A DNA stretch of 64,000 nt from Fimbriosthenelais zetlandica. Taxonomy: Eukaryota. Below, piece after piece: positions 43,301 through 64,000 of the stretch. Positions within the stretch are counted from its first letter, which is position 1. Every line of letters starts with the position of its first letter. The stretch covers positions 52,824,001 to 52,888,000 of the forward strand of contig OZ365109.1 in assembly GCA_977030845.1 (NCBI GenBank), written 5' to 3'. Both the position numbers and the translations under genes were made by a program. A model generated the notes under the pieces. The model made no database searches and had not been told where the DNA came from. It saw nothing but the letters and a program-made list of their open reading frames with translations.

Positions 43301-44542
43301 CTACATTCAAAACAAAAGCATTTATTTCCCCAAACTACCCAAGGGTCAGCTCGGAAAGGATCCAAAAGTAGTGATCATGAAGTTGGATCACAAGAAACGA
43401 GATGCCATGTCCTGCCTGAAATATTTACCCCAGATTTTCTGTATTAAAACACATTTTAAATGTATATTTTACCATTTCATTTCTATGTTTTATTCAATCA
43501 ATAATATTAGTCCCTGGCACTATGAGTCTACCTATATAACATAGTAAATTCCGTAGTACACTACACCCGATTACCCCAAGACCACACGAGTAACTGGCAC
43601 TCCACCAAACCATTTTTCTGGTTCACATATCTTATACTACTACACTATTCGCAAATAAAACATCTTCTAATGAAGAAAGGATGTTAAAATCTTTCCCCAC
43701 TTCAGAAGTTCTTTTTTCTTTCGACGGAGAAGTGTTAAAAAGAGCCAGCAAGCTTTCTTTCTAGGTCCTGATTTACTTCTTGGAGGGCATTTTCCCAGGA
43801 ATCTTGGCGAGTGTGGATGTAGCTGGGGGAATGTGGTCTCCATCCATTTCTAGGGCCTCTAAATACACACTTCATGTTTGTGCTTAACCCTGCACGGATC
43901 GATCAGCAATGCTTGTCTGGCAAGAAGATGCCACTCCCTCTCACTTTCCTCCTGAATCCAGCTTCAGGCTCAAGAATATCCAATTTACTTTTTTGTAATT
44001 TCCCTGGAGTGAATGTAATACCAAATATAGCCTACAGCAGGTCATTATTTATAGAAAACGAGGGTTGGCCCAATCATGGGGTTGTAGGACCCCCTTAATT
44101 TTGTTAAACCAACCAACTTCAATCAACCCATCCCACCCGGGCCTCTGGATTTGCCACTGCAAGTCTATCATGTTCCTTAGCAATTCTATTTAAAGAATGC
44201 ACCGATATGATTTAAAACCAAGTTCATAATCATAAATTTCAAGGAAGGAGCCCTGAGCTCTCCAGGGTGAATGGGTAAGTGGTCACTGGCTCCGTCTCGT
44301 CCCTACTAACACCATTACAGAACGCTGGTAATGTATCTAGCAGGAGGCCTATGATGAAGTGCAAGCAATATATGACTTTTGTAATAGATCAGCTTCTTTC
44401 CACTATACTTCTTGCCCCTCCGGCATGGTTGGGGTGTGGTCCTTCAGCCCTGGCTCAGGGCCACATCAAGGATCAAGGGTAGCTCAGCCCCACTCAACTG
44501 GGTCACGTCTTCTAGCCAGGGTATATAGGGGTGCTGCCAGGG

Positions 44543-44828
44543 TTGTTGCTATGGCGATAACCCTTCATCATGGATCCATCATTCACAGCTCAGCCTCACA
44601 GCTCATAGAGTATTGAACTTACAATATGAGCAACTTATCTCTATTATTATAACCCTGACTTTATCCATTTTCTTCTCATAAACCTGCATAAAAGGCTCAA
44701 TCCGTCCGTGGATTAAGAAAAGGCCTGGATTGTTGCTGAGGCGATAACCCTCCACCATGGAGCCATCATTTACAACTAAGACTTCCAACTCAGACTATTG
44801 ATCCTAAAATATGAGCAACTTATCTCTA
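44543..44828. repeat. Degenerate ~100-bp duplication offset by ~186 bp
   Basis: TTGTTGCT..GGCGATAACCCT.CA.CATGGA.CCATCATT at 44543 and 44730; identical AATATGAGCAACTTATCTCTA at 44623 and 44808. Confidence 0.85.
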
Positions 44829-47800
44829 ATTACTAGTTTTAATTTAGATTTACTCTTTATTAAACTTTCAAATTTTAAAATTAACTCTTCCTTGATACAC
44901 ACTGAATCTTTCCAGACAAATCTATGTTGATAAGCATACACAAACTACAAAGTTTATCTATTCTAATTGAAAATATTACCGAAAGTTTCATTGCTTTAGG
45001 AGTACTTTGTGCCAGCATTTCCTGCTTTGGTCGTCAGATTTTTGGGAAGCTGATTTAGCCACGGTCTGGATCTTGGAAGCACAGCTCTTATCTCTAAGCC
45101 AGCTTGTATAACAAGATAGTCCAGCTAAAGTGACATGAGTTCTGCTGATGGGGCCTCCAGGCTGGTACATTGGAGAATGAAGGCAGATTACTAAACTATC
45201 AGGGTATAGGTTCTAACACACCCCAGGGTGATGACCCTGGGGATTCTAAATGATCCAAAGCATGTCTGATAACAGCTCAATCGCTTGATGGCCAGGAGGA
45301 AATGTTCTATTTAATAGCAACATCAGCCCTGTCTGGTCTGCGTGACTAACTTCTACTTGCAGCACTGCATGAAAGAGTAAACTGCACGAAACTGCCAAAG
45401 AAGACTGCACTGAGAAATGTAGATGAAAGCAGTTGCCCAGTGTTTGGGTAAGAACAGAAATGGTCAGACTGCCAGGGTCCGCCCAATCAACGACCAAGCA
45501 CCTGGGCAACCACATTTGAGCTTCAGGTTTTCTGCGGGTAACAAAATTGCGAGGGAAAATAGATAACCATGTACCTGGGATAACCAAAGTATTGGTCCGG
45601 GATACCATTTTTAGATTATCATTGCCCAATGGTTTCAGCATTCTGAGGGCTGAATGATGGTACACAAACGAATATCTTAGTTTGTCCCAAGGGGCTCGGA
45701 CACTCGATCAGAAGACCATGTTCTACCAGAAAATGAAAGTACCCGAATACCCAGAACGGCCCCGACCGAGTTAAGATGGACACATTTGTAAACCAGGTTA
45801 TCTTTATTGCAGACAGTAGATTTGGGTGTTAACTGAGTTTGTAATGACATGATTAAAGCTTACTTTGGTTTCCTTGCTAAATGATGGCGGGTTAGGACAG
45901 CAGCATATTGTAATGTTGTAGGTCAAGTGGCTGTCAACTGGTAACATTCAAACCATGAGGGCTATAAGAGACCAGGGCCCACTAGTACAGTCACACACTG
46001 CTACAAATGCACTCACTAATCAGGAAATATTTTGTTAAAGGACATGTAAAATTGAGATTTTCTTGGCTGGACACCATAGGAAGATTCAAGAATGGAAGAA
46101 TATGTTCTATAAATAAGTAAGAGACACTAATGCCCATCAGTTCTGTAAAGAAATGGTGTCGCTTTAATAGGGATCTACTGTACTACAAAGTCTTAGCATT
46201 GGAGCTACAGCCCATTGTGTTACAAGTGAATATACAACAGAACGCCTGACAAGTGAATATGTGTCAAATACAACCGCAACACTGTGTCATAAATGGCAAT
46301 TTTTCTCTAACCATCGAGCATAATTCTGACTGATATGAGGAGGAAACAGCTTGAGGCCACAACTGAGGGGCAAATGGAAATAATGTGAAAATATGACCTG
46401 GCCTCATAATAGGGATGTGATTTTCCAGAAACGGAGACATCACTTTACTTAAAAAGGGGGTTGGCAGGGATGGCCATTGTTGTGCCTAACAGAGGGCATA
46501 TTGTTCATGAGGGATGAGAATTGTTCTTGTCAGAGCATCCTTTTCACAATGGATTCAGCTTAACATGGGGCTGGGTTTTGAGGGGTAATTTATGTCTTAT
46601 GTCAGAGGGTGTAAAACTTAACATGAAGCCACAATCAGTTGTGGTGCGCTTTCAGCCACATCCCCATCCAAATTTTGATTTTCTATTCAGGTTTTTAGTT
46701 GCAGCACCGTATGGTACAGACATCAACTATCACTGATCCAAAAAGTGTAATGAAATGGAGAGGAAATAGTTGATAAACTAAATTGAAATAGTAGATGCTA
46801 TTAGGAGGGGAGCAGTACACAAGGGAAAAAGACATAAAATATGCCATTGTGGGCAACTATATGAAAGTAAACATGATAGGGGCCAATAAAACAGGCCTAC
46901 AATAGGCCTACGTGTACGTATACTATGCATGTAGGCCTACATACTTTTACAGTACAGCCAACATTTTGAAGATGTTCTAGTATTAAAGCTGGTTAATATG
47001 GTACTCAATGGTATCCTGTCAACTGCAAAACGGCACCTAAAAACAAAATTTATTTCCATGTTGTTTTTTACACTTCACCATTCACTTCAGGATAAATATA
47101 TATGGGAACAAAAACCGAGATTTGGTACAGATGAAGTGAGTGTCCTTGACTATCCAATACTCGTGCCGCACACATCAGTGAGGAGGAGGAGGGGCTGGGA
47201 AGATGGAGCATTATTCAGAGCGTGTAGTTAGAGTTGGGTCAATGTGCTTCCCATTACAATGTTTTAGTGTTATCATTACATGAGACAACAGCTGCTTCCA
47301 CTAACACCAGTTGAGGCAGTACATTTCGTGCAAACATCATCATTCCACCTCCCAGATCATACACCAGCAATAAAATCTATTTCTGTATTTTTGAAGTCCA
47401 AAAATAAAATACAGACTGGCCTCATTTTCAATTTTAAAAATTGTATCAGATAATCAGTTCACAATAGTTATATCCATTGACTAGAGGTTGATCAAAGGAT
47501 CGACAATGTGATCATGAAACAGAAATCCCAGAGAAAGGAACAGTCTAAGAAGGCAGAGAAAGACAAGGAAGAAGATCCACAAACATGTGTATTTAATACA
47601 AGCTTTCATGTTGAGCGATTTGCACCCCATAAATTTGACGTGGGCAGCAACACTAGTTTCACTTTTTCAACCACTTTTTTTCCTCCTTCTGATCCCTGCA
47701 TTGAAGGCATCTAAGCCTTGGGATCATATTACATACTTTTGGAACCCGGGCTAATATCTCCCTCCCAAACACCCCGCTGTGAATATCTCACCACGTGTTT

Positions 47801-50800
47801 TTAATCTCCGTCTTGACTTTTTTTATCCATAAACCACCCACCTTTTAACACCAATGATATTAGCCCATTAAAAGTGTCCATAAATTATGACAAATTGGAG
47901 GGAGAGCAAGTCCCCAGTCTGCCCTTTCACTCAAGCACAGAAGCTGGATCCATTGACACAAGTCAAAGGAACCACAGATGGCGAGATGCAAGTTATCACC
48001 AGCTTTACCAGAGGGAATGGATTAGTACTGGATACATTATGATTTATAGTCAGTTGATAGTGATGAACCAGGGGTTTTAACTTACCCTGGTGTCGTACAT
48101 AGAAAACAACCAATCATACAGACATTTTAAAAACTTCCCCCTTGGATATTTATCATCGATAAAATAGTCATAATTCTGGCAAAGCATATCATGCTGTTTC
48201 ATATATAACAGAAACACATAAATCAGAAGCCTGTGATATTGCGTTACAGCAGAGGACAAATAAAAATCACAGAGATCTATATACTTTCCATTAATATCAG
48301 GTATCTGTTCCCCATTCCACTCTACCAAAAAATAAACGGTGTCATAACTTATAGGGAAGTCATCTGCTTCCATAAAATCTGAGGTAGATTCATTATTGCT
48401 CGTGACGGGATAATTAATATAACATGTGTGAATAATTGGATAATTACAGCGTAGGATATAATTGATCAGATAGACAAAGTACTGCTCGTAATTGTAATTG
48501 CACGATCAGTTTCAGTCTTCTAGTTGAATGAATAATCATGAACAAGAAAATTAGATGGCAGGAAAATGGACATGAAGTCACATAAGAAAGGGATTTCGAC
48601 AGAACCCAAAAAATAGTTATTTTTTTCCGGTCATTTTGTACTTATGCGAGTTATCAGAAAAGATGTTTTTTTGTTTGGGTCAATTAAAGGTCGATCAGGG
48701 TTGGAAGTGCCTCTCCTATCTTATTAAAGGTGACGGCGCAGACGAAATTACGCCGACGACACAAGTGACTGTCAAATGCACAAAACAGCACCGAGTGGTG
48801 ACACATTCTTCATTCAATATGGTGTTATTAAAGGGAGTAAAAACTGCTGGGCACAGAATATTGCCACGGCTTTTCTCCAAAGTGTTCTTTGTTTATCAAT
48901 TATCTTAGACTTTTTATCTTTCGTATAGTAAAAGAGTTTACTGAGTGCCTCAGGGATATACACTAAATCTTAAATCGTTTTTATTGCACACTTGTAAACA
49001 TTGTATGATTATTATCAAAAGGTACACCACAGTAGTCTTTGAAGTTACTTCTTGGTAAGAAAATTTTTTACTATCCTAAGATCACTCATCATGAAGATTG
49101 ATCAAGAACAATAAGAAAAACACATGTGAAAGAATTGGTGTGTATGTAAAAAGGTAAAGGAACACTTTGAAGCTCCTTCCTGCCCTTCCTCTCTTATACT
49201 GATCTGAATTCTCAGGCGCCGGTTTATTTCCTTTGGGAGGCATTCATGAAGCAAACCGCGATTAAATCGAGCATAAAACGCCCACACAGGGTCACAAAAA
49301 CTGCTCCATCGCCAGGAGATGGCATTCCATCTGCTTATAAATATAGAAAGGGTAATGCTCCATTTGGATCAAACCTTTTTAACACTGCCAATAAAACATC
49401 TACTGATGGTCGTATAGGTCAATGGTTGGATGATCCCATGCATACCTTTCAGGGTAATTTTGTTAAAATGACTTTTACATCTATTTGCTTTTGATTTTTT
49501 AGCATATTAAACTTTTTTCATCTAAAAACATATGAATGCCTCAGGAAAGTCATCGAAGCTTTTTTTTAAAAAAAATCTCTATTGAAGGGAATTGGTCTTG
49601 AATGGGCAAGTATATAAATTAGAGTGCATTTTTTCCTTATGAATGAGGGAACAAAGTTCATAATTATCGGTCGGATCATGGGACCATATGTTCTCAAGTA
49701 TATTCCAGTCTGGAATTTAATACAGTGTTTTATTCAGCCTCTGTAAAACCGACCTAGATCTCTTGAGGTTTCATTTTTCACTTATAACCGTCCTCGCACC
49801 TTGCACTGCTTTTATACGGCCGGTATTTTTGTTTGGAATCAATAAACACCCATTGTTGTTCAATCTCTGGTACTTGATTTCCCCCACCTACACCATCTCC
49901 GCTCAGCTATTTCAATACACCATACATCCTGCCAAATTTAGCCTTCACCAAATACTTGTGAACCAGTAAAAGCCTGACAATATGGTGCAACACCCAGTTC
50001 CAACATCACACCATAGCATCTTTCTATAACACATAAAGATACAATTGCATATAGGGTGTTATAAATGGAAATACAGGGAGTTGTCAATGGGTTGTTGTTA
50101 TAAGTAAGAGTTAAAGATGCCACACGTGGCTCATGGCCAAGATAAAGCTGGCATGGGTGGGTGTCTGTGGAGCACTGATAGAAACTCATGGAGCCAGTAC
50201 CAATAGCCAGGTGTCTACCAAAGGACAGTTTCACTTGAGATCAATCAGAAATATTATAATGCATCCCATCACCATGGGCTCTATCAAATGAAACAAATAT
50301 ACAAATATGGTGAAAGTAGTGTCTATCAATTTAGTATGTACTGTATTCACCAACGTGACCTACTAGAGAAATTTTACAACAAATGTTGCTGGTTTCTGCA
50401 TACTAATAATACTATACGTACTTAGTATGATGCTACATTATTTCAGTGATTTTCCAAAACTTCTAAACACTAACAAAGCTCAATATAAAAGAAAGGCCTT
50501 ATTGGAGCAGGCCTACACTCTACACTCCCATTTAACCTCTCATTGAGGCGATCATATTTCATCCTACATCTCCCATCTTTCTCTGACATCACAAGTGGGT
50601 CCAGGGTAACCTCCTTCATCTTAGATACATGTAGTCCCCCACTTACAGATGCTAGCATATATCCATCAAGTTTTCTGGCACACCTTCTGCCTTGACCTAT
50701 AACATTCAGGGTTAGGTTCCCTTTGATATCAGGTCCTTCTGGCACTATTCACCTTTGGTTCATGTTTTTGGACAAAGAGATATCATATCTGTGAATAAAT

Positions 50801-52502
50801 TAACACAAAATGAATACCTCTGATATTTTTTTCATTGGTTCTGGTGTTGCACGTGCAAGACCTTGTTTGACAAATCATAAAATGCAACAAGAAAAAGTAC
50901 CACTACACTTCCTTACAAGGGAAATCCATAAGAGTTGACCTCGATAATTTCTCCTCTAATGTGCCATTCCTGCTTGCTATAACTAAGAATGGGTGTGTGT
51001 GAGTGCAAAAGTTTGTGTAAATTTCACACCTTTTTAACCTGGAGATTAGAAGGGCATGAGAATCATGCAGAGAATAGGAGATCATGTAATGTGAGCGGCA
51101 GGCCTCGCTATGAAGTGGTTGTAAGTCAATATCATGAAACATGAGCCCTACCTCTACTTCCCCGAGGTCTGGGATCAAGTGTATAACTACAATGTGCTTA
51201 TAAAAGCTGAATGTGATGGGTGTGAATGAGATGTGAGTGGGGAGCATTACCTCTATAGATTCAGGCCATGTATAAACCTACAAATACCACCGTCTTCAAT
51301 AGCCAGTTATTTTAAAACATTTTAGTTGGTTAAAGGAACACTAAAGAACATGTCAGAAGGCTTTCTGCCAAAAAAGCATCCAAACCCATTTTAACTATTA
51401 TTGTATGGACGGTCACATTTACACCTTGATGGGGATACATGGCCAGTTGCATAATGTACTTATTTAACAGAGAGACTACCTTTAAACGGACAAAATCAAT
51501 GGGTATAACGGATCTGTATCCATAGAGGGCCAGCTTTCCACACAGTGCAATGCCAGCCAATTGACCCAGAATTACCACCAGACAGCATCCTGGGCAGTAG
51601 GAGGCCATCGCCCTCCCTGCTCCTCCTTCAACCTTTCAGAGCCTTCCATTGAGCATTCTGGACTAAGGGGTTTAGGTTTGACCTGATGGAACCCCTAAGG
51701 TTAACCCTCAAACTGACTGATCACCCGTGGACGACTTGAGTCCCACTTGTCAGGCTTGTGTACACGGATGATGGCTGAAGAAGGGCTGCAACTTCAAACT
51801 TCTGAAGAAGGTAACTCTTCAAAAAGGTAAATAGTCACAACAGGGATTGAATTCTGCCTCAACGAAGCAAGCTAAGCAAAGGGAGCAAAGGTATAGTCTA
51901 GCAAGTTTTCTGAACCCTGGAATGATCCAAATATTCCAATATTTTGACATTATTCAGCCTTGATTTTAGGACACCATTGTAAGTACCATTGTTTGATACA
52001 TCCCACATTTCCCACCTTTCAAACAGCTGTGACGTCACAACCCTCCTTGAGGTCAAAACAATGTGAGGAGTCACATATTTCCCGTGTAAAGGGAGATCCA
52101 GAGAACTCAAACAGTGTCCATTTTGTCACTGTGAAAAAGAGGTCCAACTCAGGCATTTAGCAGGCCTGTCTTCAGAGAATAGATCGTAACCTGAGAAGGC
52201 ATTGCTTGCTATTGTTTCCCTATCACAGAGGGACACCGGATAGGGTTTGTGTTGCCATGACAACACTAGATCCCTTACTTATGGAGCTTGGCCAGTGACA
52301 GACGGATCAAAACAAGAGTCCGCGAATAGCGTTTATTCACGCTATCCCCCAAATTTACAATGAGGCCATTGAGGGCAATAGATGGCAACCATATGCTGAT
52401 GATGACTTCCAGAATGTACATCCCTGAGGCAGAGGCTGTGGTGGACAAGGGGAGGATTAGCTTACAATTATACATTGGTGCGGAGGCTTCTAGATTGATT
52501 CT

Positions 52503-52590
52503 TAATAGTGCAAGATCCAAAAACTTGTATAAGAATAGAAGAAGTTAGATCCAAATACTTGCTTCCTAATAGAACAAGATCCAAATATTC
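52503..52590. repeat. Three degenerate ~30-bp repeats
   Basis: AATAG...AGATCCAAA(A/T)A(C/T)T at 52503, 52533, 52567. Confidence 0.65.
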
Positions 52591-55500
52591 AAACAAATTA
52601 AGATTGAAAGGCATACTGCATACTGCATAGGCATACTGGAACCTCCATGCACAACTGCCAAACCATATACATCTCATCTCCATATCTATTCTTTTGGCAT
52701 CACTCAATAAACACACCCACATGAAGTGATACCATGACAATCTATAAATCCAAATCCACTTACTATAGCTCCAATGATAGCACTAATAGGCCAAGATCGC
52801 AGTCAATTAATCACAGATAAATACCATACTAGAGTACTGTGGGGTGATTTCCCAGAATTGCCCTTAGTACGAACCTTGGAGTAAAATGATTTACTCTAAA
52901 TGCGAACTGAATATTTGAGCAACTGAACGGTTTCCAAGAACAACAAATATTATACTACGTAATGTGGAAAATGAGAGAAGAACAATTAACTGAAATCCAA
53001 ATCACCCACCAATAAAAAAAACGAATAAATATACTATATATATGTATAGTGCTTCGCGTATCCATTGTAGACTGCAGGAGTACATTTCAAAACCCACAAT
53101 TTCACACTATTTTAATTCCACATAAGGACTCATTTTGGATGATTTCTATGAACTATATTTTTCCGGCCATGTAAGTCCATGAATATTTAACCGGGGGTAC
53201 ACTGTTTAACCCGGCACCATTATCACCCCCAGCACCAGCACCACCTCCCACGCTACATGCAAACGTTACATGTTACAGACACACGTCTGTGTGACATATG
53301 TTTGGTCAATATCAGGCCTGGGGGAGACCAGCGGGGGTGCCTGAAAAAGGGGCCTCGCTCTAGCCGGCCCAGAGTGGAGGGTACTACCCCCTATAATAGT
53401 TAGTATTGTCCATGTGACCCCAGGGCCAGTTTCACATCTGGTTTGGGAATGGTTTCCATGGTGAAGTCTCTCTGAGAAGACAACATGTTCCCAGAGATGG
53501 GGTGGTGTAGGCTGCTGGGGTAGTCCACTGCTGCAGGCTGCTGGGCAGAGACCCATATGATCCAATACATGTAGGCTACATAGCCAGAGTATTGTTAGTG
53601 TATTAACTTGTACATGTTCACTCATTCAATGGTTTAGGTCTAGTGAATTCATACAGAACTACACTGGCTTATCAGTCCTGCGAAATTATCTTTAAGCCAT
53701 AGATTGATTTGATGGAATGGGTGAATGCATTTCCACTTCCAAGGGCAGAACATCTTAAAACACTGGATCAAAGACTGTTCGCATAGGTACATCGGTAGGT
53801 GTTGGTGGGGGGGGGGGGGGGGCTCATGACAAAAATCGTATTAAAAGACCCCTGACTAGTTCCATACATCTCTGTGCTATATCTGTGTTGTTATTAGGTG
53901 GTTTTGATAGTTTGGTCGTTCTGGGGGTGAGAACCCTCCCAATGTATAAGGAAGCATTAATGCAATGCAAACTGAGCTTCACTCATGTGTCACTGGAGCA
54001 GGCTATAAAGTACCGCCGACAAATGCACACTCACAGCACCAGACACCTCCTTTTGTGGACGAGGGCAAAGTTTGATTATGTTTAGTTGATTCAATTTCAG
54101 AATTAAAGTATATAGGACATGGAAATATATCCAGAACAGGATGGGGACAATTTCTTGACTGACTTATATGGGGTTTTTGGATATCAAAGACGGGTACACT
54201 TGTCACACGAGACATTCTCAAGTTATCCCACTTGTACTTTATTATAGGAAATGTCTTTACATTTCAAAGATTGACTCCCAAACCAAAATTACATTGGTGT
54301 CAATCACAATTCTTTTTTGAGTGATATCTGCCTTCAATTTATCACCTAAAATCCTTTGATTAGTTCATTTCCACTTTCAATTAGTTTCAATAGGCTTCAA
54401 TTTTCCACGCGTGACATCCGATACATGGCAGTGTGGCAAAGTAACCTGATGCATATAAACATTTGATTTGGACCAGTTTAAAAAGCAGTGCTGTTTGAAA
54501 TGTCAAGTGCCAACAGAGAGAAGATTGGGACCGTGGACAAGGCAAAAGGCCTGAAGGAAGTTGGGGAGGTTGGGGACGAAGGGGAGGGAGGGGGAACCAC
54601 CTGAAGGTTTAAAATGACAATGACATTAAAACGTGAAGGCTGACAGTAAGCCTGGCCCTGGAGCAGCGTACCAGCTGCTTCTGTGGTTGGAGGTCTGTGT
54701 ATCTAGTAGACTGACACTTATTAAACGGCCAGTCAATCAAATATGGACAATATCCTAAGGATACCATGTTTCTAAAGTGTATAGCCATATGTAAGGAACA
54801 CCAACTGAATATCCTACAACGGACCTTTCTGTAGATGTATCTAAAACATAAGACAGTGGAAATCAATTTTTGAATGGTAGTGTCACGTTGAAAGGCATTT
54901 TTGTCAACAAAAAAACTGCGGCAGATATATGGAATATGGGTTTAAGGGTTTAACCTAAGTGCAGAATTTGATGTCAGTATTACATATAAACCATGGCAGG
55001 TTGTGAAAATATAAAACCCTTTTTGGCTTCCTCCATGACACGAGGTCAGGTGCTCAGCTATTTTCACAGCCTGTGATACCGCAGCACCAGAAATTCAAAA
55101 CCCTCTCTGGGAAATGTTCTTCATAACTTTACATTGATATAAAAAAAACTTAAGAATGACTATCCAGAAGTAGTAGAAGCATGTAGACGGCCTTGGCTTT
55201 GTCCATATTTCCTTAAGATTCAATTTCATAATATTCATCTAATAATTAATGCTCTGATGCCAAAATACCAGTCAATAGAAGTTCTCAATAACAAAGCATG
55301 AACCCAAAATAATGAGTGAATGATACGTTGAAAATAAAGAGTTTCAAGATCAGAAAGGTCAGGCCTGGGAGGAGGGTAGGGGAATGTATTGTGAGATAGG
55401 AGAGTAAGATGATAGTTCAGGCTCTGGCATCCCGCTGGTCATCATTTCAACAGGTCCGCATGAGAGGCATTGGGGGAGAGGGACAGACGAACGCCCCTCT

Positions 55501-55726
55501 AAATTACAACAAGTTAAAGATACCCTTAACATATATGTATACAATAGACTAAAGGCAATTATGTTACATATTATGCATAGAAATCTTAATATGTGACTGA
55601 TGGTATTGCGATAGTTCCATTAATGAGATATGCCAAGAAACCTAATAGTAAAACATTCCCTTTAAACATGGTCATTACTGGACATATTCTCAATTGGGAC
55701 CACTCAAGGTGTGCAGTATAGCCTAA

Positions 55727-55741
55727 GGCCACCAGGTGGCC
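55727..55741. promoter_or_regulatory. CTCF-like motif (palindromic)
   Basis: GGCCACCAGGTGGCC matches the CCACCAGGTGGC core of the CTCF consensus. Confidence 0.4.
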
Positions 55742-58700
55742 ATTTCAATTGGCATGGAACTAGGATCATAGGAAATATCTTAATTAACATTCCATGGACA
55801 GTCCCGGATTAAAAATCTCCATTAGATTATCTGATAAGAAGAATCCAAATTCCGGAACTAATGGTTCATAAAATGCGATCGGCATTCCATCATTTTGCTT
55901 TGGGGAGTGCTAATAAATTTCAAGGCTGGAGGAGGCTTGGAAATAAATTACCTCTCTCATTCTTCTTCCCCTTTTCTCGAGGGCGTTACACTCGTTGGTT
56001 TTTGGTTGAAATTCAACACCTTAACCAACGCCCGCCGTTTACACTGGTGTCCAGAGGGGCAACTTCGACACTGGTCATTTGTAAACAAAGCCAGAACAAA
56101 TCACCATATAGATGACCATTGGCCACCCTCTAACAAAAGCTGACCAGTGCTGCCAGCCTCGGGGGCTTGAAAACACGATCTACATCCCAAGATATCAATT
56201 CACTCCTCCCTCAATATATGCTAAAAACAGGTTATACGAGATAAAAATAGCCCATTTTTTCAGTAACTGCATTTCCCTATTGTAAATTGCCTCTAGTGGT
56301 ATCACAGAGGAAATATACATATTTCATACTCATGATATATTATTTAAGGCAATGGGTGGTTTGTTATTAATACAGTCTACCTGTGTGTGTGTTTTTAGTT
56401 CCAACCTGAGGGACGGTCCTGCTCTTTCACACCCAGAGGGTAGCCTCAAGGTCGTTGGAAGGTCAAAGCTCGGACTAATGACAACAGTTAGGACGAATGT
56501 GAGACACATACGGGTCAACAAGGTCGTCCGTCTTTTCTCCACTCTCAGCTTTTCCATGGCTTTAACAAGAGATCTTGAACGGCAAGTTTTGATTGATTGT
56601 TTGAATCCTTTAAAGAGCCATGTGTAGCGGTGGTGAATAGTGTCAATATATTCTCACACCCCCAGGGCACCGTGTATAAAACCTGCAGTCTTCATGCTCT
56701 CTGAATTTTAAAGTTCCAGCTTGTATGAGATATTCATTACTCTCAGATTTATACACAAGTAATTCAGTAACTGTGTATTAGCGATCTGGGACATCAGTCT
56801 TCAACTGAGCCATTGTACAATATGTGTATCGTTTGACAATGTGCCTTTTCTATCAATGCAAATACGTTACACCAGTACAGTGTATATGAGTGGAACAAAT
56901 CACCTTCCTGAACATGTAAGTACATCGAACAGACATCAAAAGGCGAAGCAAAATCTACACAATGACTTCTCATACAAGAAGAAATGCACTGCAAAGATTC
57001 AAGAAAGGCATCACAGATTCTTTTCAAAATTCCCCTCAGAATTGTTTTCCATCATTTCAAAGGGCAAAAAAATCTCCAAGAGGGTGGAGCCATGGCTGTG
57101 GGAGTGTATATTGCTTTGGTTATGATAGTGATTATTATGTTTTAGCACCAGCACCACAAACAGGCTGATATCAATGTAAGGACAAAGCTGAGCTTCTCAG
57201 GGGTTCTGACCTCAGCAGACAAGCCTCATATTGTAGTATGGAGCAGGGTGCTGTGGGATCTCTCCAAAACCTCCTCACCAACGTGGGTGTTTGTTTAGTG
57301 TGTTGGAAATAACATCATGTGTGCCACAAAATCAAAGTCTTCCTGGCATCTTCTGATAGCAAGGTTATGGCTCTTCAGAGAAACTACCAGTGGATTGCTT
57401 ATTGGGCATGAAAATTACTGAATTTTGCATTTGTCAGGTTTTCCAATTCTCAATACCTTTCAGGGGGAATGGAGATAAATTTCAGGTTCTGGAAAACCTA
57501 AAACATTTGGCAGTTAATGTAACCATAAAGTGAGCATACAGATACGTTGCGATATTAGCCTTATTATATAGTGCGAGGTTTCACTTCTTGCTATATTAGG
57601 TCAATCTGATAGACTCCACCAAGAAGCTATATAGACTGATGTGATTCAAGCCAATCTAAAAAAAGAAATTGTTGTACATCAGTCCAGTCAATGTCACCTT
57701 GATGTAGCTACCATCTTTTACCAACCATTGATATAGCAAATCGGAAATGGCTGGATGTATGTAGCCAGTATAATCCCTCACTCCACCATTCAGTATGACA
57801 GGCCTGAGATCCACCATAATTGCCCTCCTTTGTGATCATAAATGATCCAGTAAATATATCTTAAAAATGTAAACGATGGAGATGCAATAAAATTGGCAAA
57901 TGGCAAGTGGATTTGTAAAGGTTGATGGAGGACATTTTGGTGCATTTTCTCTGGGGAAAGCCTGGGCTATTTTTCGACTGGAGTGATCTCACCTTTCAGG
58001 TGTTTTGTGGCGGTAGCTTTTGATGTGGCAATGTACAGGTGGATGTGACGGTCGCCAGTCTGGGCCCAATGTCGCTCAAGAATGACTCATATTCCCCCTC
58101 AAGTATTTCATGTCCCCGTTTTAGTGCAGGCTCCATATTTCCTATACAGATCTATAAAGTGGCTATTGAGGTGAGCACTGGGAACAACCTGCGTTCATCT
58201 GTGGTAAACTTCATTAAGGAAACCTCACTGAGTTTTCCTTAGGCGAAAAACCGAGGAACAACTGTTGCCAGGGCGAGGTTAAAATGGTTATTATACCCAG
58301 TTTACACACGGTGATTAGACAATTACCTGTGTATACCCGACTCTTTTGTAGGTGAACCTTGCCAAAAATGGCTCTCATCAAGCACAGAGTCAGGCTGGGG
58401 AGGATGAGAAATGAAGATGAAAAATGAAGATGGATACAATCTGGGGTTACTTATTGAGAAGAAAAGGGCAATTTTTATCATTGAGTTTGCACAATGTCAG
58501 TAACAATGTCAGCCAGCCTCCACTGGCCTACAAACAGGGTTACTTATACACACAGCGATCCATCACACTTTAATGACACAATGGCTGAATACGTCTAGAG
58601 ATTACATTTACAGAAGGTACATTTAAAAGAGAAAAGTTTGCCTTCTCCTTCCGCATTAGATGCAGCAGAAGGACATAATACGTGGAGGCAGGGATAAATC

Positions 58701-59461
58701 ATCCAGACCTCAATGAGACACAAGTTTTTACATTTACATTGAATCTGTGTTACATCCCTCATGAACATATCATTTTAATGTAAAAACTTGTAAGTTAAAA
58801 ATTGACTGCGAAGAGACTGAAAACATATCAGTATATCACAATCTGAATTGTGAATAAATGAACTTAGATCATGGAACTGCCTGAAAACTATCTTCAGCTA
58901 TCTCCAATCTGAAAGTTAATATACCTTACTTCCTGCATCTCTGAACCCATAGTATAGGTCAATCAATGACTTAAGCATGCCCAGCCGACCAAGAATGGGA
59001 AGTCAATCAAGGGAGTACAAAGTTGCGAGTAACCTGAATACCACTAAAGTGGCAAAGATTGGAGATCAATCACTTTTCACTAGAAATCCAGCACCATAAA
59101 TATACACAAATATATTGTAATGTTCAGCCGATAGAGATCAAGGTGACCCCAATATTTCAGGGTCTACATTCTCATGGTAATAGTATCCTTGTAGAAGAGT
59201 CATCAAGAACCATTTATCAACTATTTCAATGCACCATTTTACTTACAAATGCAGAGATGTAGAAATATGTTGAAGTTAAAGCATAGACAAATATTAACAC
59301 TTGATATATAGTTGTTCATCAGTCTATGCTTTAAGATATAGGCAACAGCCAATTGCGAGAGGAATGTAAAAGAATCATTGCCGCCATTAGAGAAGAGCAG
59401 GCCATTGTATAGCTACTGCCTGTTTCCTTCTCTTCCTGGGATAGGTATTTTGTACTTCCTG

Positions 59462-59477
59462 AGGTCAGGAAAGGTCA
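59462..59477 (+). promoter_or_regulatory. Perfect DR4 nuclear-receptor response element
   Basis: AGGTCA-GGAA-AGGTCA; further AGGTCA at 59669 and 59706. Function untested. Confidence 0.45.
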
Positions 59478-60233
59478 ATGATCCATCTATATTACCATAG
59501 GGGAATCGCATGATGTATAGCCATCTTCTGCCTATGGTATGGCCATCATGCCCATGTAGCATTACATGGGGTGAGACAGTGGAATCTCCTGCTATTATCG
59601 CCCATTAGGACCAGCCCCCTAGCAGCTCACCATGTAACAAGTCATGTAATAGTGGTCACGTGTCCCCCAGGTCAGGTGACCATCTCTAACTCGCCTGATT
59701 GGTCCAGGTCAATGATGTTGATATCAAGCTGAGCATGTGCCAACATTTCCCGCCAAAATACACACAGCCCTGGGCACAGACACTGAATGCTGGTGGGAGG
59801 CCAGAATAATGGAGACAGGGCCAGTACTGAACACATCTCCCACCTTGTCCTTGATAAGTCCTACCACAGTCAATATAAACTTCCTATAATTTGCCACGAA
59901 GCAGAACTTTTACCCAAAAATCAAATGATGAAATATATGTGGGATGATGATCTCACTGCCTATCACTTAAAGTATGACATTTCCAGCTGCCCACTACGTC
60001 TGAACACAATTAAGTGGTATGAAAATAAGATTTTAATAAATTTCCCATTGCCTAAAGCGTGACATATGGACATATTTTACACTCCCAGGGTAGATGAGGG
60101 CCTGCGGGAGCAAGCTGGATGCCCACATGAAATTTCGAAGTTCATCATATCTAAGAGGAGGGCCAGAATGGCAACGATCAACGCTAGTAAAACATACTTA
60201 CAATTTGTACCTCAAGTTTCTTAAAGGCGAATG

Positions 60234-60275
60234 TCTTACCTGTAAGATAAAAGACAAACAGTTTGTAAGAATTAA
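60234..60275 (-). other. Candidate recursive splice site (3'SS immediately followed by 5'SS)
   Basis: Minus strand TTAAT-TCTTACAAAC-TGTTTGTCTTTTATCTTACAG|GTAAGA, junction between 60240 and 60239. Confidence 0.5.
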
Positions 60276-63200
60276 TCAAATAACACGACAATTAGAACAT
60301 AACATATCACTAGAATCAAATGAACTCAAAATCATTAGGAATAGGACAGTGAGGTGTGCTATAGTACACGAGTGTTACAGTTCTTCATCCCATCCATCTC
60401 CACCTAAATGGTCAAAAGAGACAATCTACCAGCCCTTATATAGGGGTAGACTACCTACCCTGTCTGAGCTGTCTGAGGCAAAACGAAGAAGGTCTTGACC
60501 TCAACTCAAAATTCTATTATCCTAACCACAGATCATGATTATGGTGGCATGGAGGAACTAGAGCCATGCTTCACCTGAGGTCGAACTATTTGGGACACTC
60601 CGAGACCTGATCATTTTCAAAAGTGATAGTCATCATAGACATGTGGGGTATATGTTATGTGAGGGGTGTGTACTATTGACATAAGAAGGAGGGTATTTTG
60701 GCTTAAATAGGGACAAACACTCGTAAGATTAAATGCATCAATGATGACAAAATAACAGCAACATCAATGTATTTCATATAGGACTACATTTAGAGCTGAA
60801 AATTCCTGACCATCCATATGTGCGCAGTTCCCAATGATAATTCTACATAAAACTGGCATAACCTTCAAGAAGATGATGTGGAAAATAGTGCCAAATGTTT
60901 GATGTGACAGATATATTCTGCTGATTTAAATTGACAAGGGAGCAAGGTAGTCTATGATATAAATGTGACGCCAGGTTGACATGTTCAGTTGTAGGAGAGC
61001 TCTGAATGGGCCCAATAAACACATGAACATATTATCAATTTTAAATCTCATTCAAAGCAGTCAAGTCTGGCTTCTAAGTTCATATCGCCGTCACAACTGG
61101 AAAGGGTCATCAGACTGTTGGCTGGATCGCCCTGGGACTACCATGTATGAAAGTATAATAAATATGAACAGGGTTTATAGCAGTGACAACCTGCCTATGG
61201 CTCGGCTAACTCCCATCTTCAGGTTGCGGAGATAAAATCGCTTTTATAAACATGGCCCATACAAACTTGATGACCGAGGGGTCAACCTTCAATCTTAAGT
61301 GCTTCCTGAGTGCTAGCAGATCTCGTAAGGAGATTTCACAAGTGGTTTATAGAGACAGGCTATTTGGTATATCAATTTAGGTGATCAGACTCTCTGGTGT
61401 GTATGGATATTATAGCATACATTGAGACTGACTGGTACATGATGCATGAGATTGTGACTTGAGACCATGTCCACAAAAGTGAGTAAAATGGCAGTTTCAG
61501 TTAGCTAAACAACATTTTTTCTGTTCTTTTTAGCAGGCAATGTATGCCAAGATACATACATCTCAAATATCAAATGTCAATTCCGGTGAAAAATGGGTGT
61601 TTTGAGAAGGGCATGCGAAAAAGAATAGATATTCAAATTAATGAGCAATAAAGTGAATATCAACTGGTCAAATCAGTCTCAAAAACCAAACATGGATCCG
61701 TCTTAAATCGATAGCTTGCATCTGGATGTACTCCAGGCTCAGCTGGCTTCTTTTTGGATCATTGTGGAGAGCCCTGCTGGATCCTTGTAGTCAGCAGACA
61801 TGTAGACTAGACACACGGCCGATCAAAAAACACTAGAATAGAGAGTGGGAAGAGAAGGGGGAGAATAATATAGAGAGAGATGGAAGTCCCGGCCTAGATA
61901 GGAACCAACACAACCTAGAGACCCGGCTACTTTAGTCTATCATTAAACACACACAGACCAGACAACACATAAGGATGGTGAGCTCTGTCAGAGAGCCCAG
62001 GTGAAGTCCAGGGGTTTCCCTCGTATATATATAAAACCAACAGTTATGTGGGCAGGTGAGGGGTGGTTAGCAAAGGTATCCAGTCAGTAAATCAGTGAGA
62101 AAACCTATAGTCATACATCAAAGATTCAACACCCCATTTAAAGGTAATAAGCAACAGGTGTAAAGGGCTTTCCCATACAATGTATAGGAGTATTAGAAGG
62201 GTTCTTAAATGACAACCTGAACCACCACACTATTTTAAGACAACGCTTGACTTTTCTGCATATATCCCCTCCCTTCCTCCATAGAAACAATCGGAGCAAA
62301 AGGTGTAATCAAAGGACAATTTTGCTAAGATATATCATTGATAAATCTGTTTCTATTATGAAACTAGTTTTAATTCAGTCAGTGCTTTGTTTTGGTATAT
62401 ACCGTTAAACTAAGTAAGTTGATCAGGAATGCTATAAATAATTCAGCTCCGAGCTGCTCTTTAAGACTTAGCAACATGTATACTATGTCATTGTAATATG
62501 AAGTAGGACCCAACTGGGAGCCATCTGTTCCCCTTGTTCTACACCACGATTAAGTGCACCTAAGCCACTGGGTTCATGACATATTGTTGAGCTACTGAGA
62601 TTGATATTCTTGTTGGATCATCCCTGGAGGAAGGTGATCCAAGGCAGCATCACAGACACTGGAGGTGTGTTTACAAACAGGAAGACAGGGGGAGCAGTAC
62701 CTCCAGACCAGCCTACCCACCTGGCTACCAGTGGTTAGAGAGAGAAAGAGAAAGTCCAAGACAACTTCAAACACCTTCAGAGGGTCCTCCCTTATTCTAT
62801 CTCAATAATAAACTCACAAATGATCGCCACCTAAGTCAAGAAGGAAGCTTGTTTTAAAACTGTTGGTATTCGGAGTTATTATTCTTTAGTTATCGAGAAG
62901 ATTACCACGGGCGTTTTGAGCAACTCGTAGATATTGGACTAGGCCTATGCTATCATGGAACAACAAAAGTCTAAACATATCTTCCATGGATAATCTTAAT
63001 AAAAGTCTTCCTTTGATACATTGACATGAATGATGTGCTGCCTGCTGTATAACTTCAATATATTATCTCATTATCACAAGAAATGATGGATTAGCAAAAC
63101 AAATGGTAACTTAAATCATCCATTTTTTTTAAATTTATTTATAATACATGTATACACCCTGCTGAGGTATCAGTGTAAAATATATGATAATAGACTAGAG

Positions 63201-64000
63201 GGAGGGTCTGGTGTGAGGGTTTGGTGGAGAGAGTGAGAGTGAGGGACTTAGTGACAGAATGTGTCACAGTATCTATGACAGATGACTGCCGCCGAAGCAA
63301 TGGAAAGTTTCATCATAATATCATTTATAGAGGGTTGAACATGAGAAAGGATGAATCTAATGAATCGATGAATGAAAAGGACAAGTTGGAAGCTAAACCA
63401 TGGGAAGACCTCCCAGCAAGTTGATGCCAAAATCTGCCTGAAATTCTTCCCACAATCTCTAGTCAGTATCTAGATTCTATATGAGACTAACCTGATTGCC
63501 AACATAATTTCTCAACCTCTATATTTCTCTCAAGAGAGAGATAAGCCAGAATTTCATAGAGCCATTTACTAATCTGAAGGAGCACCCACTTCCAACATAT
63601 AGGACAATAAGATCTATGGTAAGATTAAATATGATCCAGCCTACAAATGGGCAATAAATCACATAAAACCTAAATAACAAAGTGATTGCTGACATTTCCT
63701 CTTCCGACCTCTTGACATATCTACTACATGGGAATATATTTATATAAATTCCAACACGCGTAGAAGCCTATCAGATAGCATGTCAGATATATATGTGCCA
63801 AATCTCTTGCTATCTTGACTTCTCTTCCATCTGCCAGCTCTCTCTTGCAAACCCCTGCCATCATCTGACCTCTTCAACTCTGACCCCAGAGGTCGGCCTA
63901 AGCACACCTGTAGGTTGATATCAACACAGTCCTTTGCTCTGAAGCATTTGATAGTGGGAGGATGAAATATTTGGTTTACGTCCGAGGGTCTGGCAGCATT

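What the first reader, a model, noticed from the sequence alone, without database searches (positions are those of the whole stretch)
60234..60275. Candidate recursive-splicing (ratchet) site in the giant 5' intron
Seen: on the gene's strand the sequence reads ...TTAATTCTTACAAACTGTTTGTCTTTTATCTTACAG|GTAAGA. That is a YTNAY branch-point-like motif (A about 26 nt upstream), a long pyrimidine tract and CAG, followed with zero spacing by a strong GTAAG donor. It lies 25.9 kb upstream of the next exon and is the only strong site of this kind I found by eye in 34.4-64 kb. Established: this architecture defines recursive splice sites in long Drosophila and vertebrate introns. Inference: the intron is removed in steps, which I do not know to be documented in molluscs or other lophotrochozoans. 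Alternative: a transposon end (TTAAAGG at 60221 lies just beside it) or the donor of a non-coding exon. The upstream phase-1 translation is not laminin-like.
Basis: partly seen in the sequence, partly recalled or inferred. Interest (0 to 1): 0.75.

Follow-up and report, generated by a model that had tools for sequence, protein, structure and literature searches.

The report
Predicted recursive splice site, laminin intron
Midway through the 48-kb first intron of a laminin gamma-1 gene, an intron end is fused directly to an intron start and followed by a short hidden exon; this is the known signature of stepwise (recursive) intron removal, here a likely new example in an unidentified invertebrate, with no RNA data to confirm it.

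Summary
On the minus strand the window reads a branch-point-like CTTAC, a T-rich tract and TTACAG, then GTAAGA with no spacing (AG ends at 60240, GT starts at 60239).

The site is single copy, not a transposon end. It lies 21,960 nt after the exon-1 donor and 25,856 nt before exon 2, in the 47,816-nt phase-1 first intron of a laminin gamma-1-like gene. Exon 1 lies outside the window.

- **Strength:** it is by far the best AG|GT site on the sense strand (score 11.3, next best 3.2, antisense best 1.3). Chance expectation is about 0.05-0.13 per intron.
- **Hidden exon:** a GTAAGT donor 38 nt downstream defines a short, out-of-frame cryptic exon, as at fly ratchet points.
- **Genome-wide:** zero-spaced motifs of this class are 2.5-5.6 times commoner than their controls.
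- **Relatives:** one relative with an otherwise unalignable intron has one equally strong site 25.0 kb after exon 1. A second relative shows none in the 33.8 kb I could read.
- **RNA:** no sequencing runs were listed, so junctions, sawtooth coverage and lariats could not be tested.

Verdict: probably a real recursive splice site (about 0.7), a new member of a known kind. The scan has already noted about 25 similar candidates elsewhere in this genome.

The parts
60265..60269 (-). Branch-point-like CTTAC (YTNAY); the A is at 60266, 26 nt before the AG.
   Evidence: Read directly. The relative's site has CTCAC with its A at about the same distance.
60243..60260 (-). T-rich polypyrimidine tract (TGTTTGTCTTTTATCTTA).
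   Evidence: It has 15 of 20 pyrimidines by the same measure on which the gene's 13 real acceptors score 12-18, median 14. Its acceptor score of 8.0 falls in the upper part of the real range of 3.3-14.7.
60240..60242 (-). Recursive 3' splice site, CAG. The last intron base of segment 1 is 60240.
60234..60239 (-). Ratchet-point 5' splice site, GTAAGA. Once joined to the end of exon 1 (..CCTAG) it reads TAG|GTAAGA.
   Evidence: Its donor score of 5.55 is about the median of 16 real donors of this gene.
60202..60239 (-). Predicted cryptic RS-exon, 38 nt, out of frame (38 mod 3 = 2).
   Evidence: The phase-1 translation GKTFAFKKLEVQI is not laminin-like. The homologue alignment runs from exon 1 straight into exon 2, so no coding exon is missing.
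60195..60201 (-). Downstream donor of the cryptic exon, ATT|GTAAGTA (GT at 60201-60200).
   Evidence: It scores 2.64, weaker than the ratchet-point donor at 5.55.
34384..64000 (-). The part of intron 1 that lies in the window. The whole intron is 47,816 nt and runs on to G000:C1:52906199, which is 82199 in window numbering extended past the window's end (called ext coordinates below).
34082..34383 (-). Coding exon 2 (Laminin_N positions about 89-193). Its acceptor is TTTTCTTACAG|GTAAAG. The 3' end of the exon is inferred.

Best explanation
The site is an intronic recursive splice site (a ratchet point) of the fly type, in the first intron of a laminin gamma-1-like gene.

Proposed mechanism (inferred):
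1. As the 47.8-kb intron is transcribed, the spliceosome recognises a short cryptic exon, 60239-60202. It is bounded by the acceptor at 60240 and the GTAAGT donor at 60201.
2. Exon 1 is joined to this acceptor, removing the first 21,960 nt as a lariat.
3. The junction then reads TAG|GTAAGA, a regenerated 5' splice site that is stronger than the cryptic exon's own donor.
4. That regenerated donor is spliced to the exon-2 acceptor at 34384. This removes the cryptic exon and the remaining 25,856 nt.
5. The mature mRNA carries exon 1 joined directly to exon 2, with nothing left from the site.

Shown here: the sequence anatomy, its position, its rarity, the genome-wide enrichment of the motif, and an equivalent site in one relative. 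Inferred: that the site is actually used, and in this order.
For: Anatomy and position:
- Branch-like CTTAC, a T-rich tract, CAG and GTAAGA follow each other with zero spacing.
- The site is on the sense strand, 46% of the way along a 47,816-nt phase-1 intron.
- The segments of 22.0 and 25.9 kb fall within the 2.6-63.6 kb range (mean 18 kb) reported for Drosophila (10.1101/006163).

Strength:
- It is the outstanding AG|GT site of the intron: 11.3 against 3.2 for the next sense site and 1.3 for the best antisense site. The chance expectation is 0.05-0.12.
- The acceptor half is almost identical to the gene's own exon-2 acceptor, sharing the 12 nt TCTTACAGGTAA.

Cryptic exon:
- It is 38 nt, out of frame, and has a GTAAGT donor weaker than the regenerated donor (2.64 against 5.55).
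- This matches the described architecture: a short RS-exon of about 50 nt, generally out of frame, skipped because the ratchet-point donor wins (PMC8605326).

Not a repeat or a nested gene:
- Single copy.
- No Pfam or Rfam feature nearby.

Genome-wide counts:
- Y10-N-CAG|GTAAGT occurs 50 times. The same pattern read backwards occurs 9 times, the version with a 1-nt spacer 3 times, and the purine-tract version 10 times.
- The looser class that includes this site occurs 201 times, against 79 backwards and 45 with the spacer. The purine version shows no excess over its own control, 170 against 158.

Relative:
- In ENA ERZ25767047 (exon 1 is 79% identical in protein) the intron does not align. Its only strong sense-strand site, CTCTTACAG|GTGAGT, scores 11.0 against 4.9 for the next best.
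- That site lies 25,014 nt after the exon-1 donor, and a CAG|GTAAAC donor follows it 52 nt downstream.
- The expected number of such sites by chance is about 0.05 in that intron, or 0.09 over both relatives.
Against: - No RNA data: both run searches listed nothing, so there are no junction reads, sawtooth coverage or lariats.
- A second relative (ERZ21781341) has no site scoring above 1.9 in the 33.8 kb upstream of its exon 2. Its exon 1 was not reached.
- Ungapped identity between the two sites is 12 of the last 15 nt. Generic real acceptors give 8-11, so homology proper is not shown.
- With a cruder pyrimidine count, an antisense C-rich site in the relative scores as high as the sense site. 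The T-rich model that removes it was adopted after I had seen it.
- In the relative the cryptic donor is not weaker than the ratchet-point donor under my small model.
Confidence: 0.7

Rival explanations
1. Chance juxtaposition. An unused AG|GT follows a T-rich stretch, and the intron is removed in one step.
For: The expected number of sites this good is 0.05-0.13 per 47.8-kb intron. One background site of nearly equal score was seen in 400 kb of strand. The second relative shows no site in 33.8 kb. Homology with the first relative's site is weak.
Against: The site stands 8 score units above every other site of the intron on either strand. The zero-spaced motif is enriched 2.5-5.6 times genome-wide over composition-matched controls. 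An independent relative has one equally outstanding site at a similar distance from exon 1, where about 0.05 is expected. A plausible cryptic-exon donor follows the site in both species.
Confidence: 0.17
2. A regulated poison exon. The acceptor at 60240 and the donor at 60201 define a 38-nt exon that is sometimes kept in the mRNA. This shifts the frame and sends the laminin message to nonsense-mediated decay, and the GT at 60239 plays no part.
For: The acceptor and the GTAAGT 38 nt downstream are both plausible, and the exon is out of frame. Expressed RS-exons and poison exons are discussed alongside cryptic RS-exons in PMC8605326.
Against: A plain poison exon does not need a strong donor immediately after the AG, yet both species have GTRAG there. 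The regenerated donor outscores the +38 donor in this genome. Exon length and content are not conserved: 38 nt here against 33 or 52 nt in the relative. This reading shares the first splicing step with the main one and differs only in the outcome.
Confidence: 0.09
3. The donor of an alternative first exon or of a non-coding exon, transcribed from a promoter inside the intron.
For: CAG|GTAAGA is a good donor in its genomic context (score 7.2).
Against: The sequence upstream is a branch-point motif plus a T-rich tract ending in TTACAG, which is an acceptor and not exon sequence. No Pfam or Rfam feature was found in the flanks. A transcript starting here would lack the signal peptide and the first 135 residues of the Laminin_N domain.
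Confidence: 0.03
4. The terminus of a transposon that happens to carry splice-like signals.
For: TTAAAGG lies beside the site. A 90-nt repeat family lies 800 nt away at 59357-59445.
Against: The 401 nt around the site match only themselves in the 447-Mb genome. In the 2.9-kb query only 59357-59445 is repeated.
Confidence: 0.01

Closest known systems
Drosophila intronic ratchet points with cryptic RS-exons (Ubx, kuz, Bx, luna; Hatton 1998, Duff 2015, Joseph 2018, all as cited in PMC8605326 and 10.1101/006163)
   Same: - An acceptor and a donor juxtaposed with zero spacing, and a prominent pyrimidine tract with TT at -6/-5.
- A position inside a very long intron, with segments of about 20 kb.
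- A short out-of-frame cryptic exon whose own donor is weaker.
- A motif enriched genome-wide, and an equivalent site in a related species.
   Different: - The host is an unidentified animal. Its exon-2 peptide is at most 70% identical to any named protein found, and its laminin about 50% identical to insect laminins, so it is neither a close insect nor a close vertebrate relative.
- There is no RNA evidence.
- Conservation was seen in one of two relatives only.
- TT at -6/-5 does not discriminate here, because 10 of 13 ordinary acceptors of the gene also have it.
Vertebrate recursive splicing through RS-exons (Sibley 2015, as cited in PMC8605326)
   Same: The mechanism is the same. An RS-exon is defined first, the upstream exon is spliced to it, and the regenerated 5' splice site competes with the RS-exon's own donor.
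   Different: According to PMC8605326, vertebrates have few fully suppressed intronic sites and many expressed RS-exons. Here the genome-wide motif excess looks more like the fly situation, with many intronic sites. I did not test this beyond counting motifs.
Ordinary constitutive exon that happens to begin with GT (exon 2 of this same gene begins GTAAAG)
   Same: The acceptor is almost identical, sharing the 12 nt TCTTACAGGTAA.
   Different: Exon 2 is 302 nt of conserved Laminin_N coding sequence. The candidate is followed by 38 nt that are neither laminin-like nor in frame, and no coding exon is missing between exons 1 and 2.

Membership tests
Intronic ratchet point / recursive splice site (fly type) | A 3' splice site (branch point, pyrimidine tract, YAG) fused with zero spacing to a 5' splice site (GTRAG). 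| tested here: met
   The composite score is 11.3 against 3.2 for the next best site of the intron.
Intronic ratchet point / recursive splice site (fly type) | Lies on the sense strand inside a very long intron, with no annotated exon at that place. | tested here: met
   The intron is 47,816 nt and the site is 21,960 nt from its 5' end. The homologue alignment is contiguous from exon 1 to exon 2.
Intronic ratchet point / recursive splice site (fly type) | Ligation to the upstream exon regenerates a functional 5' splice site. | tested here: met
   Tested in silico only. TAG|GTAAGA scores 5.55, about the median of 16 real donors of the gene.
Intronic ratchet point / recursive splice site (fly type) | A short cryptic RS-exon with its own downstream donor, generally out of frame and poorly conserved. 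| tested here: met
   The exon is 38 nt and is followed by GTAAGT. The relative has donor-like sites at +33 and +52, and the exon content is not conserved.
Intronic ratchet point / recursive splice site (fly type) | The ratchet-point donor is stronger than the RS-exon donor, so the cryptic exon is skipped. | tested here: inconclusive
   Met in this genome (5.55 against 2.64). Not met in the relative under a 16-site model (5.66 against 6.78). MaxEntScan was not available.
Intronic ratchet point / recursive splice site (fly type) | The AG|GT motif is conserved in related species at the matching place. | tested here: inconclusive
   One relative has a single equally strong site 25.0 kb after exon 1. 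A second has none in the 33.8 kb read. Identity over the last 15 nt is 12/15, against 8-11 for generic acceptors.
Intronic ratchet point / recursive splice site (fly type) | Junction reads from the upstream exon to the site, sawtooth read density, and lariats ending at the site. | not testable with these tools
   No sequencing run was listed, either for the intron or for an exon, so read laying could not be used.
Transposon terminus | Many copies in the genome, ending at the same point, in either orientation. | tested here: not met
   Only the self-match was found for 60100-60500. The one repeated piece in 58800-61700 is 59357-59445.
Coding cassette exon | A frame-preserving length and conserved protein-coding content. 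| tested here: not met
   The exon is 38 nt and its translation is not laminin-like. No residues are missing between exons 1 and 2 in the alignment to a laminin gamma-1.

The most novel reading that the evidence does not exclude
Fly-type zero-nucleotide recursive splicing with cryptic RS-exons is a selected, genome-wide feature of this unidentified invertebrate, involving on the order of 100 sites. Other notes of the scan suggest the animal is a worm-like spiralian; I did not test that. The laminin site would have arisen as intron 1 grew from about 3 kb, as seen in a more distant lineage, to about 48 kb. If so, recursive splicing is either ancestral to bilaterians or evolves repeatedly whenever introns become giant.
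Probability: 0.5. Interest if true: 0.6.

Novelty: new member of a known kind. Interest (0 to 1): 0.4.

Why it matters
Recursive splicing has been shown experimentally in Drosophila and in vertebrates. Three searches of the paper library that paired it with mollusc, annelid or lophotrochozoa gave no relevant paper (two found none, one a single unrelated paper).

A well-built site in an essential basement-membrane gene, together with a genome-wide excess of the motif, suggests that the mechanism is used wherever introns become very long. It also gives a concrete site to test by RT-PCR: exon 1 into 60150-60239.

For annotation there is a practical warning. Such sites can be mistaken for exon boundaries, and a 38-nt frameshifting pseudo-exon may appear in transcript assemblies.

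Taken alone, this is one more RNA-unverified example. The scan already holds about 25 similar notes for this genome.

Tried and rejected
RNA evidence:
- The look-up of sequencing runs listed nothing for the intron (58500-62000) or for a coding exon (6560-6940) (one search was a busy error). Read laying was therefore never used.
- A last protein search with the exon-1 peptide, hoping for transcript fragments that show exon 1 joined to the cryptic exon, gave only 30 hits. None was closer than the known genomic ORFs.

Finding orthologues:
- A full-length search with the best full-length representative returned an insect protein and only arthropod relatives, which was no use for orthologous introns.
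- The closest relative (90% identical in exon 1) exists only as 3-4 kb contigs that do not reach the site.
- Two assemblies returned no DNA because the sample files are too large.
Exon 2 of the first relative and exon 1 of the second were never reached.

Taxon:
- Cluster look-ups and the protein atlas gave no organism names.

Ideas rejected:
- Partial duplication of exon 2: only 12 nt align.
- Transposon end.
- Nested gene or RNA gene. The bacterial-type promoter scan has no bearing on an animal genome.
- A crude pyrimidine-count score was replaced by a T-weighted score after an antisense C-rich site in the relative scored equally high. I report both scores.

Full report
**1. The observation**

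In order it holds:
- a CTTAC branch-point-like motif, with its A at 60266;
- a T-rich tract at 60260-60243;
- CAG ending at 60240;
- GTAAGA starting at 60239, with no spacing.

AGGTAAG occurs five times on the two strands of the window, and only this copy follows a pyrimidine-rich tract. The window has no N and no soft-masking.

**2. The gene and the intron**

The window is G000:C1:52824001-52888000. A Laminin_N (PF00055) search of the genome finds three hits on the minus strand:
- positions 89-193 at window 34073-34384;
- positions 189-233 at window 26799-26933;
- positions 1-91 at C1:52906192-52906482, which is 18 kb beyond the window's end.

I fetched that flank. Below, coordinates above 64000, marked 'ext', continue the window numbering into this fetched flank. 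It holds coding exon 1: the ATG at ext 82605, a signal peptide, 135 codons plus one base, and the donor CCTAG|GTAAGTCC.

Exon 2 starts at 34383 behind the acceptor TTTTCTTACAG, and continues the protein as ..NLTLNL|[13 protein letters not shown]. A tblastn of an insect laminin gamma-1 (P0142) runs from exon 1 (query residues 25-133) straight into exon 2 (131-245), so no coding exon is missing between them.

Intron 1 is therefore 47,816 nt and phase 1. The candidate splits it into 21,960 nt and 25,856 nt.

**3. Is it a repeat or part of another gene?**

The 401 nt around the site match only themselves in the 447-Mb genome. In a 2.9-kb query, only a 90-nt element at 59357-59445 is repeated, 800 nt from the site. 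ORFs in the flanks have no Pfam match, and there is no Rfam match. The resemblance to the exon-2 acceptor is limited to the 12 nt TCTTACAGGTAA, so this is not a duplicated exon.

**4. Strength and chance**

The 13 real acceptors of this gene have 12-18 pyrimidines in the 20-nt measuring window, with a median of 14. The candidate has 15.

- **Background count.** In 200 kb of random genome read on both strands there are 1,424 AGGT. Of these, 3.4% have 15 or more pyrimidines and 3.3% continue as GTRAG. None combines both with YAG.
- **Crude score.** A score built on the plain pyrimidine count gives an expectation of 0.14 per intron.
- **T-weighted score.** A score trained on the 13 acceptors and 16 donors gives the candidate 11.3. 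The next sense-strand site of the intron scores 3.2, the best antisense site 1.3, and the best background site in 400 kb of strand 10.5. The expectation is 0.05 by convolution, or about 0.12 from that single background site.

**5. The cryptic exon**

A GTAAGT follows the site 38 nt downstream, with its GT at 60201-60200. It bounds a 38-nt, out-of-frame exon whose phase-1 translation is not laminin-like.

With a 16-donor matrix, the regenerated donor TAG|GTAAGA scores 5.55, about the median of the real donors. The cryptic donor ATT|GTAAGT scores 2.64.

This is the architecture described for Drosophila. The ratchet point is a tandem acceptor and donor. [quoted passage not shown] That exon is skipped because the ratchet-point donor wins the competition (PMC8605326). 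The Drosophila survey reports segments of 2.6-63.6 kb with a mean of 18 kb, and TT at -6/-5 in 196 of 197 sites (10.1101/006163). The candidate has TT there too, but so do 10 of the 13 ordinary acceptors of this gene, so that feature does not discriminate here.

**6. Genome-wide counts in this genome**

| Pattern | Count | Same pattern read backwards |
|---|---|---|
| Strict: Y10-N-CAG\|GTAAGT | 50 | 9 |
| Strict, with a 1-nt spacer | 3 | 14 |
| Strict, purine tract | 10 | 13 |
| Class: Y6-N-Y4-N-CAG\|GTRAG, which lists this very site | 201 | 79 |
| Class, with a 1-nt spacer | 45 | 40 |
| Class, purine tract | 170 | 158 |

Only the zero-spaced pyrimidine form exceeds its own composition-matched control, by 5.6 times for the strict pattern and 2.5 times for the class pattern.

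Two cautions apply. About six of the 50 strict hits share one identical 20-mer and may belong to a repeat. Some of the excess must also come from ordinary exons that happen to begin with GTRAG; I did not measure that share.

**7. Relatives**

- **Closest relative.** The exon-1 peptide finds single-exon ORFs in unannotated assemblies. The closest, 90% identical, sits on 3-4 kb contigs. Apart from exon 1 (85% nucleotide identity), only 32-42-nt islands of its intron align. Intron sequence is therefore largely unalignable at this distance.
- **First relative with a long contig.** It is 79% identical and lies on an 828-kb contig of ENA ERZ25767047. I walked 45.6 kb into its intron in five look-ups and did not reach exon 2. 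Nothing but exon 1 aligns to our sequence. At 25,014 nt after the exon-1 donor lies CCTTTTCTCTCTTACAG|GTGAGTGCC. It has CTCAC with its A 26 nt upstream, and donor-like sites at +33 and +52. It scores 11.0, against 4.9 for the next sense site and 3.3 for the best antisense site. The expectation is about 0.05 for that intron, or 0.09 counting both relatives.
- **Caveats on that relative.** Under the crude pyrimidine count, an antisense C-rich site at +38.9 kb scores as high as the sense site. Ungapped identity between the two sites is 12 of the last 15 nt. That is the best of 112 pyrimidine-rich YAG sites in the relative's intron, but real acceptors of our gene reach 8-11.
- **Second relative.** In ERZ21781341 (exon 2 is 80% identical by tblastn) I read 33.8 kb upstream of exon 2. 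There was no site above 1.9, and I did not reach exon 1.
- **More distant lineage.** In ERZ25072999 (66% identical) the exon-1 and exon-2 ORFs lie only about 3 kb apart. The giant intron is therefore a feature of the nearer lineages only.

**8. What could not be done**

No sequencing run was listed for the intron or for an exon, so there are no junction, coverage or lariat data. The organism could not be named. The closest named protein to exon 2 is a fish protein at 69-70% identity, and the laminin is about 50% identical to insect laminins. Other follow-ups of this scan call the animal worm-like; I did not test that.

**9. Weighing the evidence**

The anatomy meets every sequence-level criterion of a fly-type ratchet point. 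The site is rare enough that chance would place about 0.05-0.13 such sites in this intron. The motif class shows a clear genome-wide excess. One independent relative has a single matching site at a similar distance from exon 1.

Against this stand the lack of RNA data, the absence of a site in the part of the second relative that I could read, and the weak evidence for homology proper.

My estimates are:
- about 0.7 that the site is used for recursive splicing;
- about 0.17 that it is chance;
- about 0.09 that it is mainly a poison exon;
- the small remainder for an alternative-exon donor or a transposon end.

**10. Novelty**

This is a new member of a known kind. The scan has already recorded about 25 recursive-splicing notes elsewhere in this genome, several followed up with similar conclusions. 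Three library searches pairing recursive splicing with mollusc, annelid or lophotrochozoa gave no relevant paper: two found none, and one found a single unrelated paper. The library does not cover most subscription journals.

Noticed in passing
window 34378-34394 (minus strand): Exon 2 itself begins with GTAAAG straight after its acceptor (TCTTACAG|GTAAAG). The mature exon 1-exon 2 junction therefore reads TAG|GTAAAG, a weak donor-like sequence scoring 3.9 on my matrix. It shares 12 nt with the candidate site. In a relative, exon 2 begins with GGAAAG instead.
   Followed up: partly
window 59357-59445: A short repeat of about 90 nt, with at least 39 other copies across the genome at 77-90% identity. 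It is probably a SINE or MITE fragment and lies 800 nt from the site.
   Followed up: no
L003:2241 and L003:2608 (ext 76241 and 76608, minus strand; outside the window): Two weaker AG|GT composites lie about 6 kb after exon 1: CCCCCCTCAGGTCCAG|GTAAGG and TTTTCCTGCAG|GTATAT. They score 7.3 and 5.9 on the crude model. On the T-weighted model 76608 scores 3.2 and 76241 falls below the four best sites.
   Followed up: partly
L035 about 13548, minus strand (relative ERZ25767047, 38.9 kb after its exon 1): An antisense C-rich composite site, CCCCTAACCACAG|GTAAGTGC, is followed within 20 nt by TGACGTCA, a CRE-like palindrome. It may be the first-exon donor of an antisense transcript, or it may be chance.
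   Followed up: partly
ENA ERZ25072999 (no DNA returned): In a more distant lineage (exon 1 is 66% identical) the Laminin_N exon-1 and exon-2 ORFs are only about 3 kb apart. Intron 1 therefore expanded roughly 15-fold in the lineage of this genome.
   Followed up: no
L007:1-41 and L033:19145-19423: Reverse-transcriptase (RVT_1) ORFs lie upstream of the relative's laminin gene and inside the second relative's intron 1. This is consistent with intron growth by retroelement insertion.
   Followed up: no
window 60094-60498 (plus strand): A 134-aa ATG-started ORF runs antisense across the candidate site. It has no Pfam match and is probably a chance ORF.
   Followed up: partly
G000:C1:52244146, 53036626, 53294624, 53728695: Four further matches to the ratchet-point class pattern lie within about 1 Mb of this window on the same chromosome. 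I did not examine their gene context.
   Followed up: no
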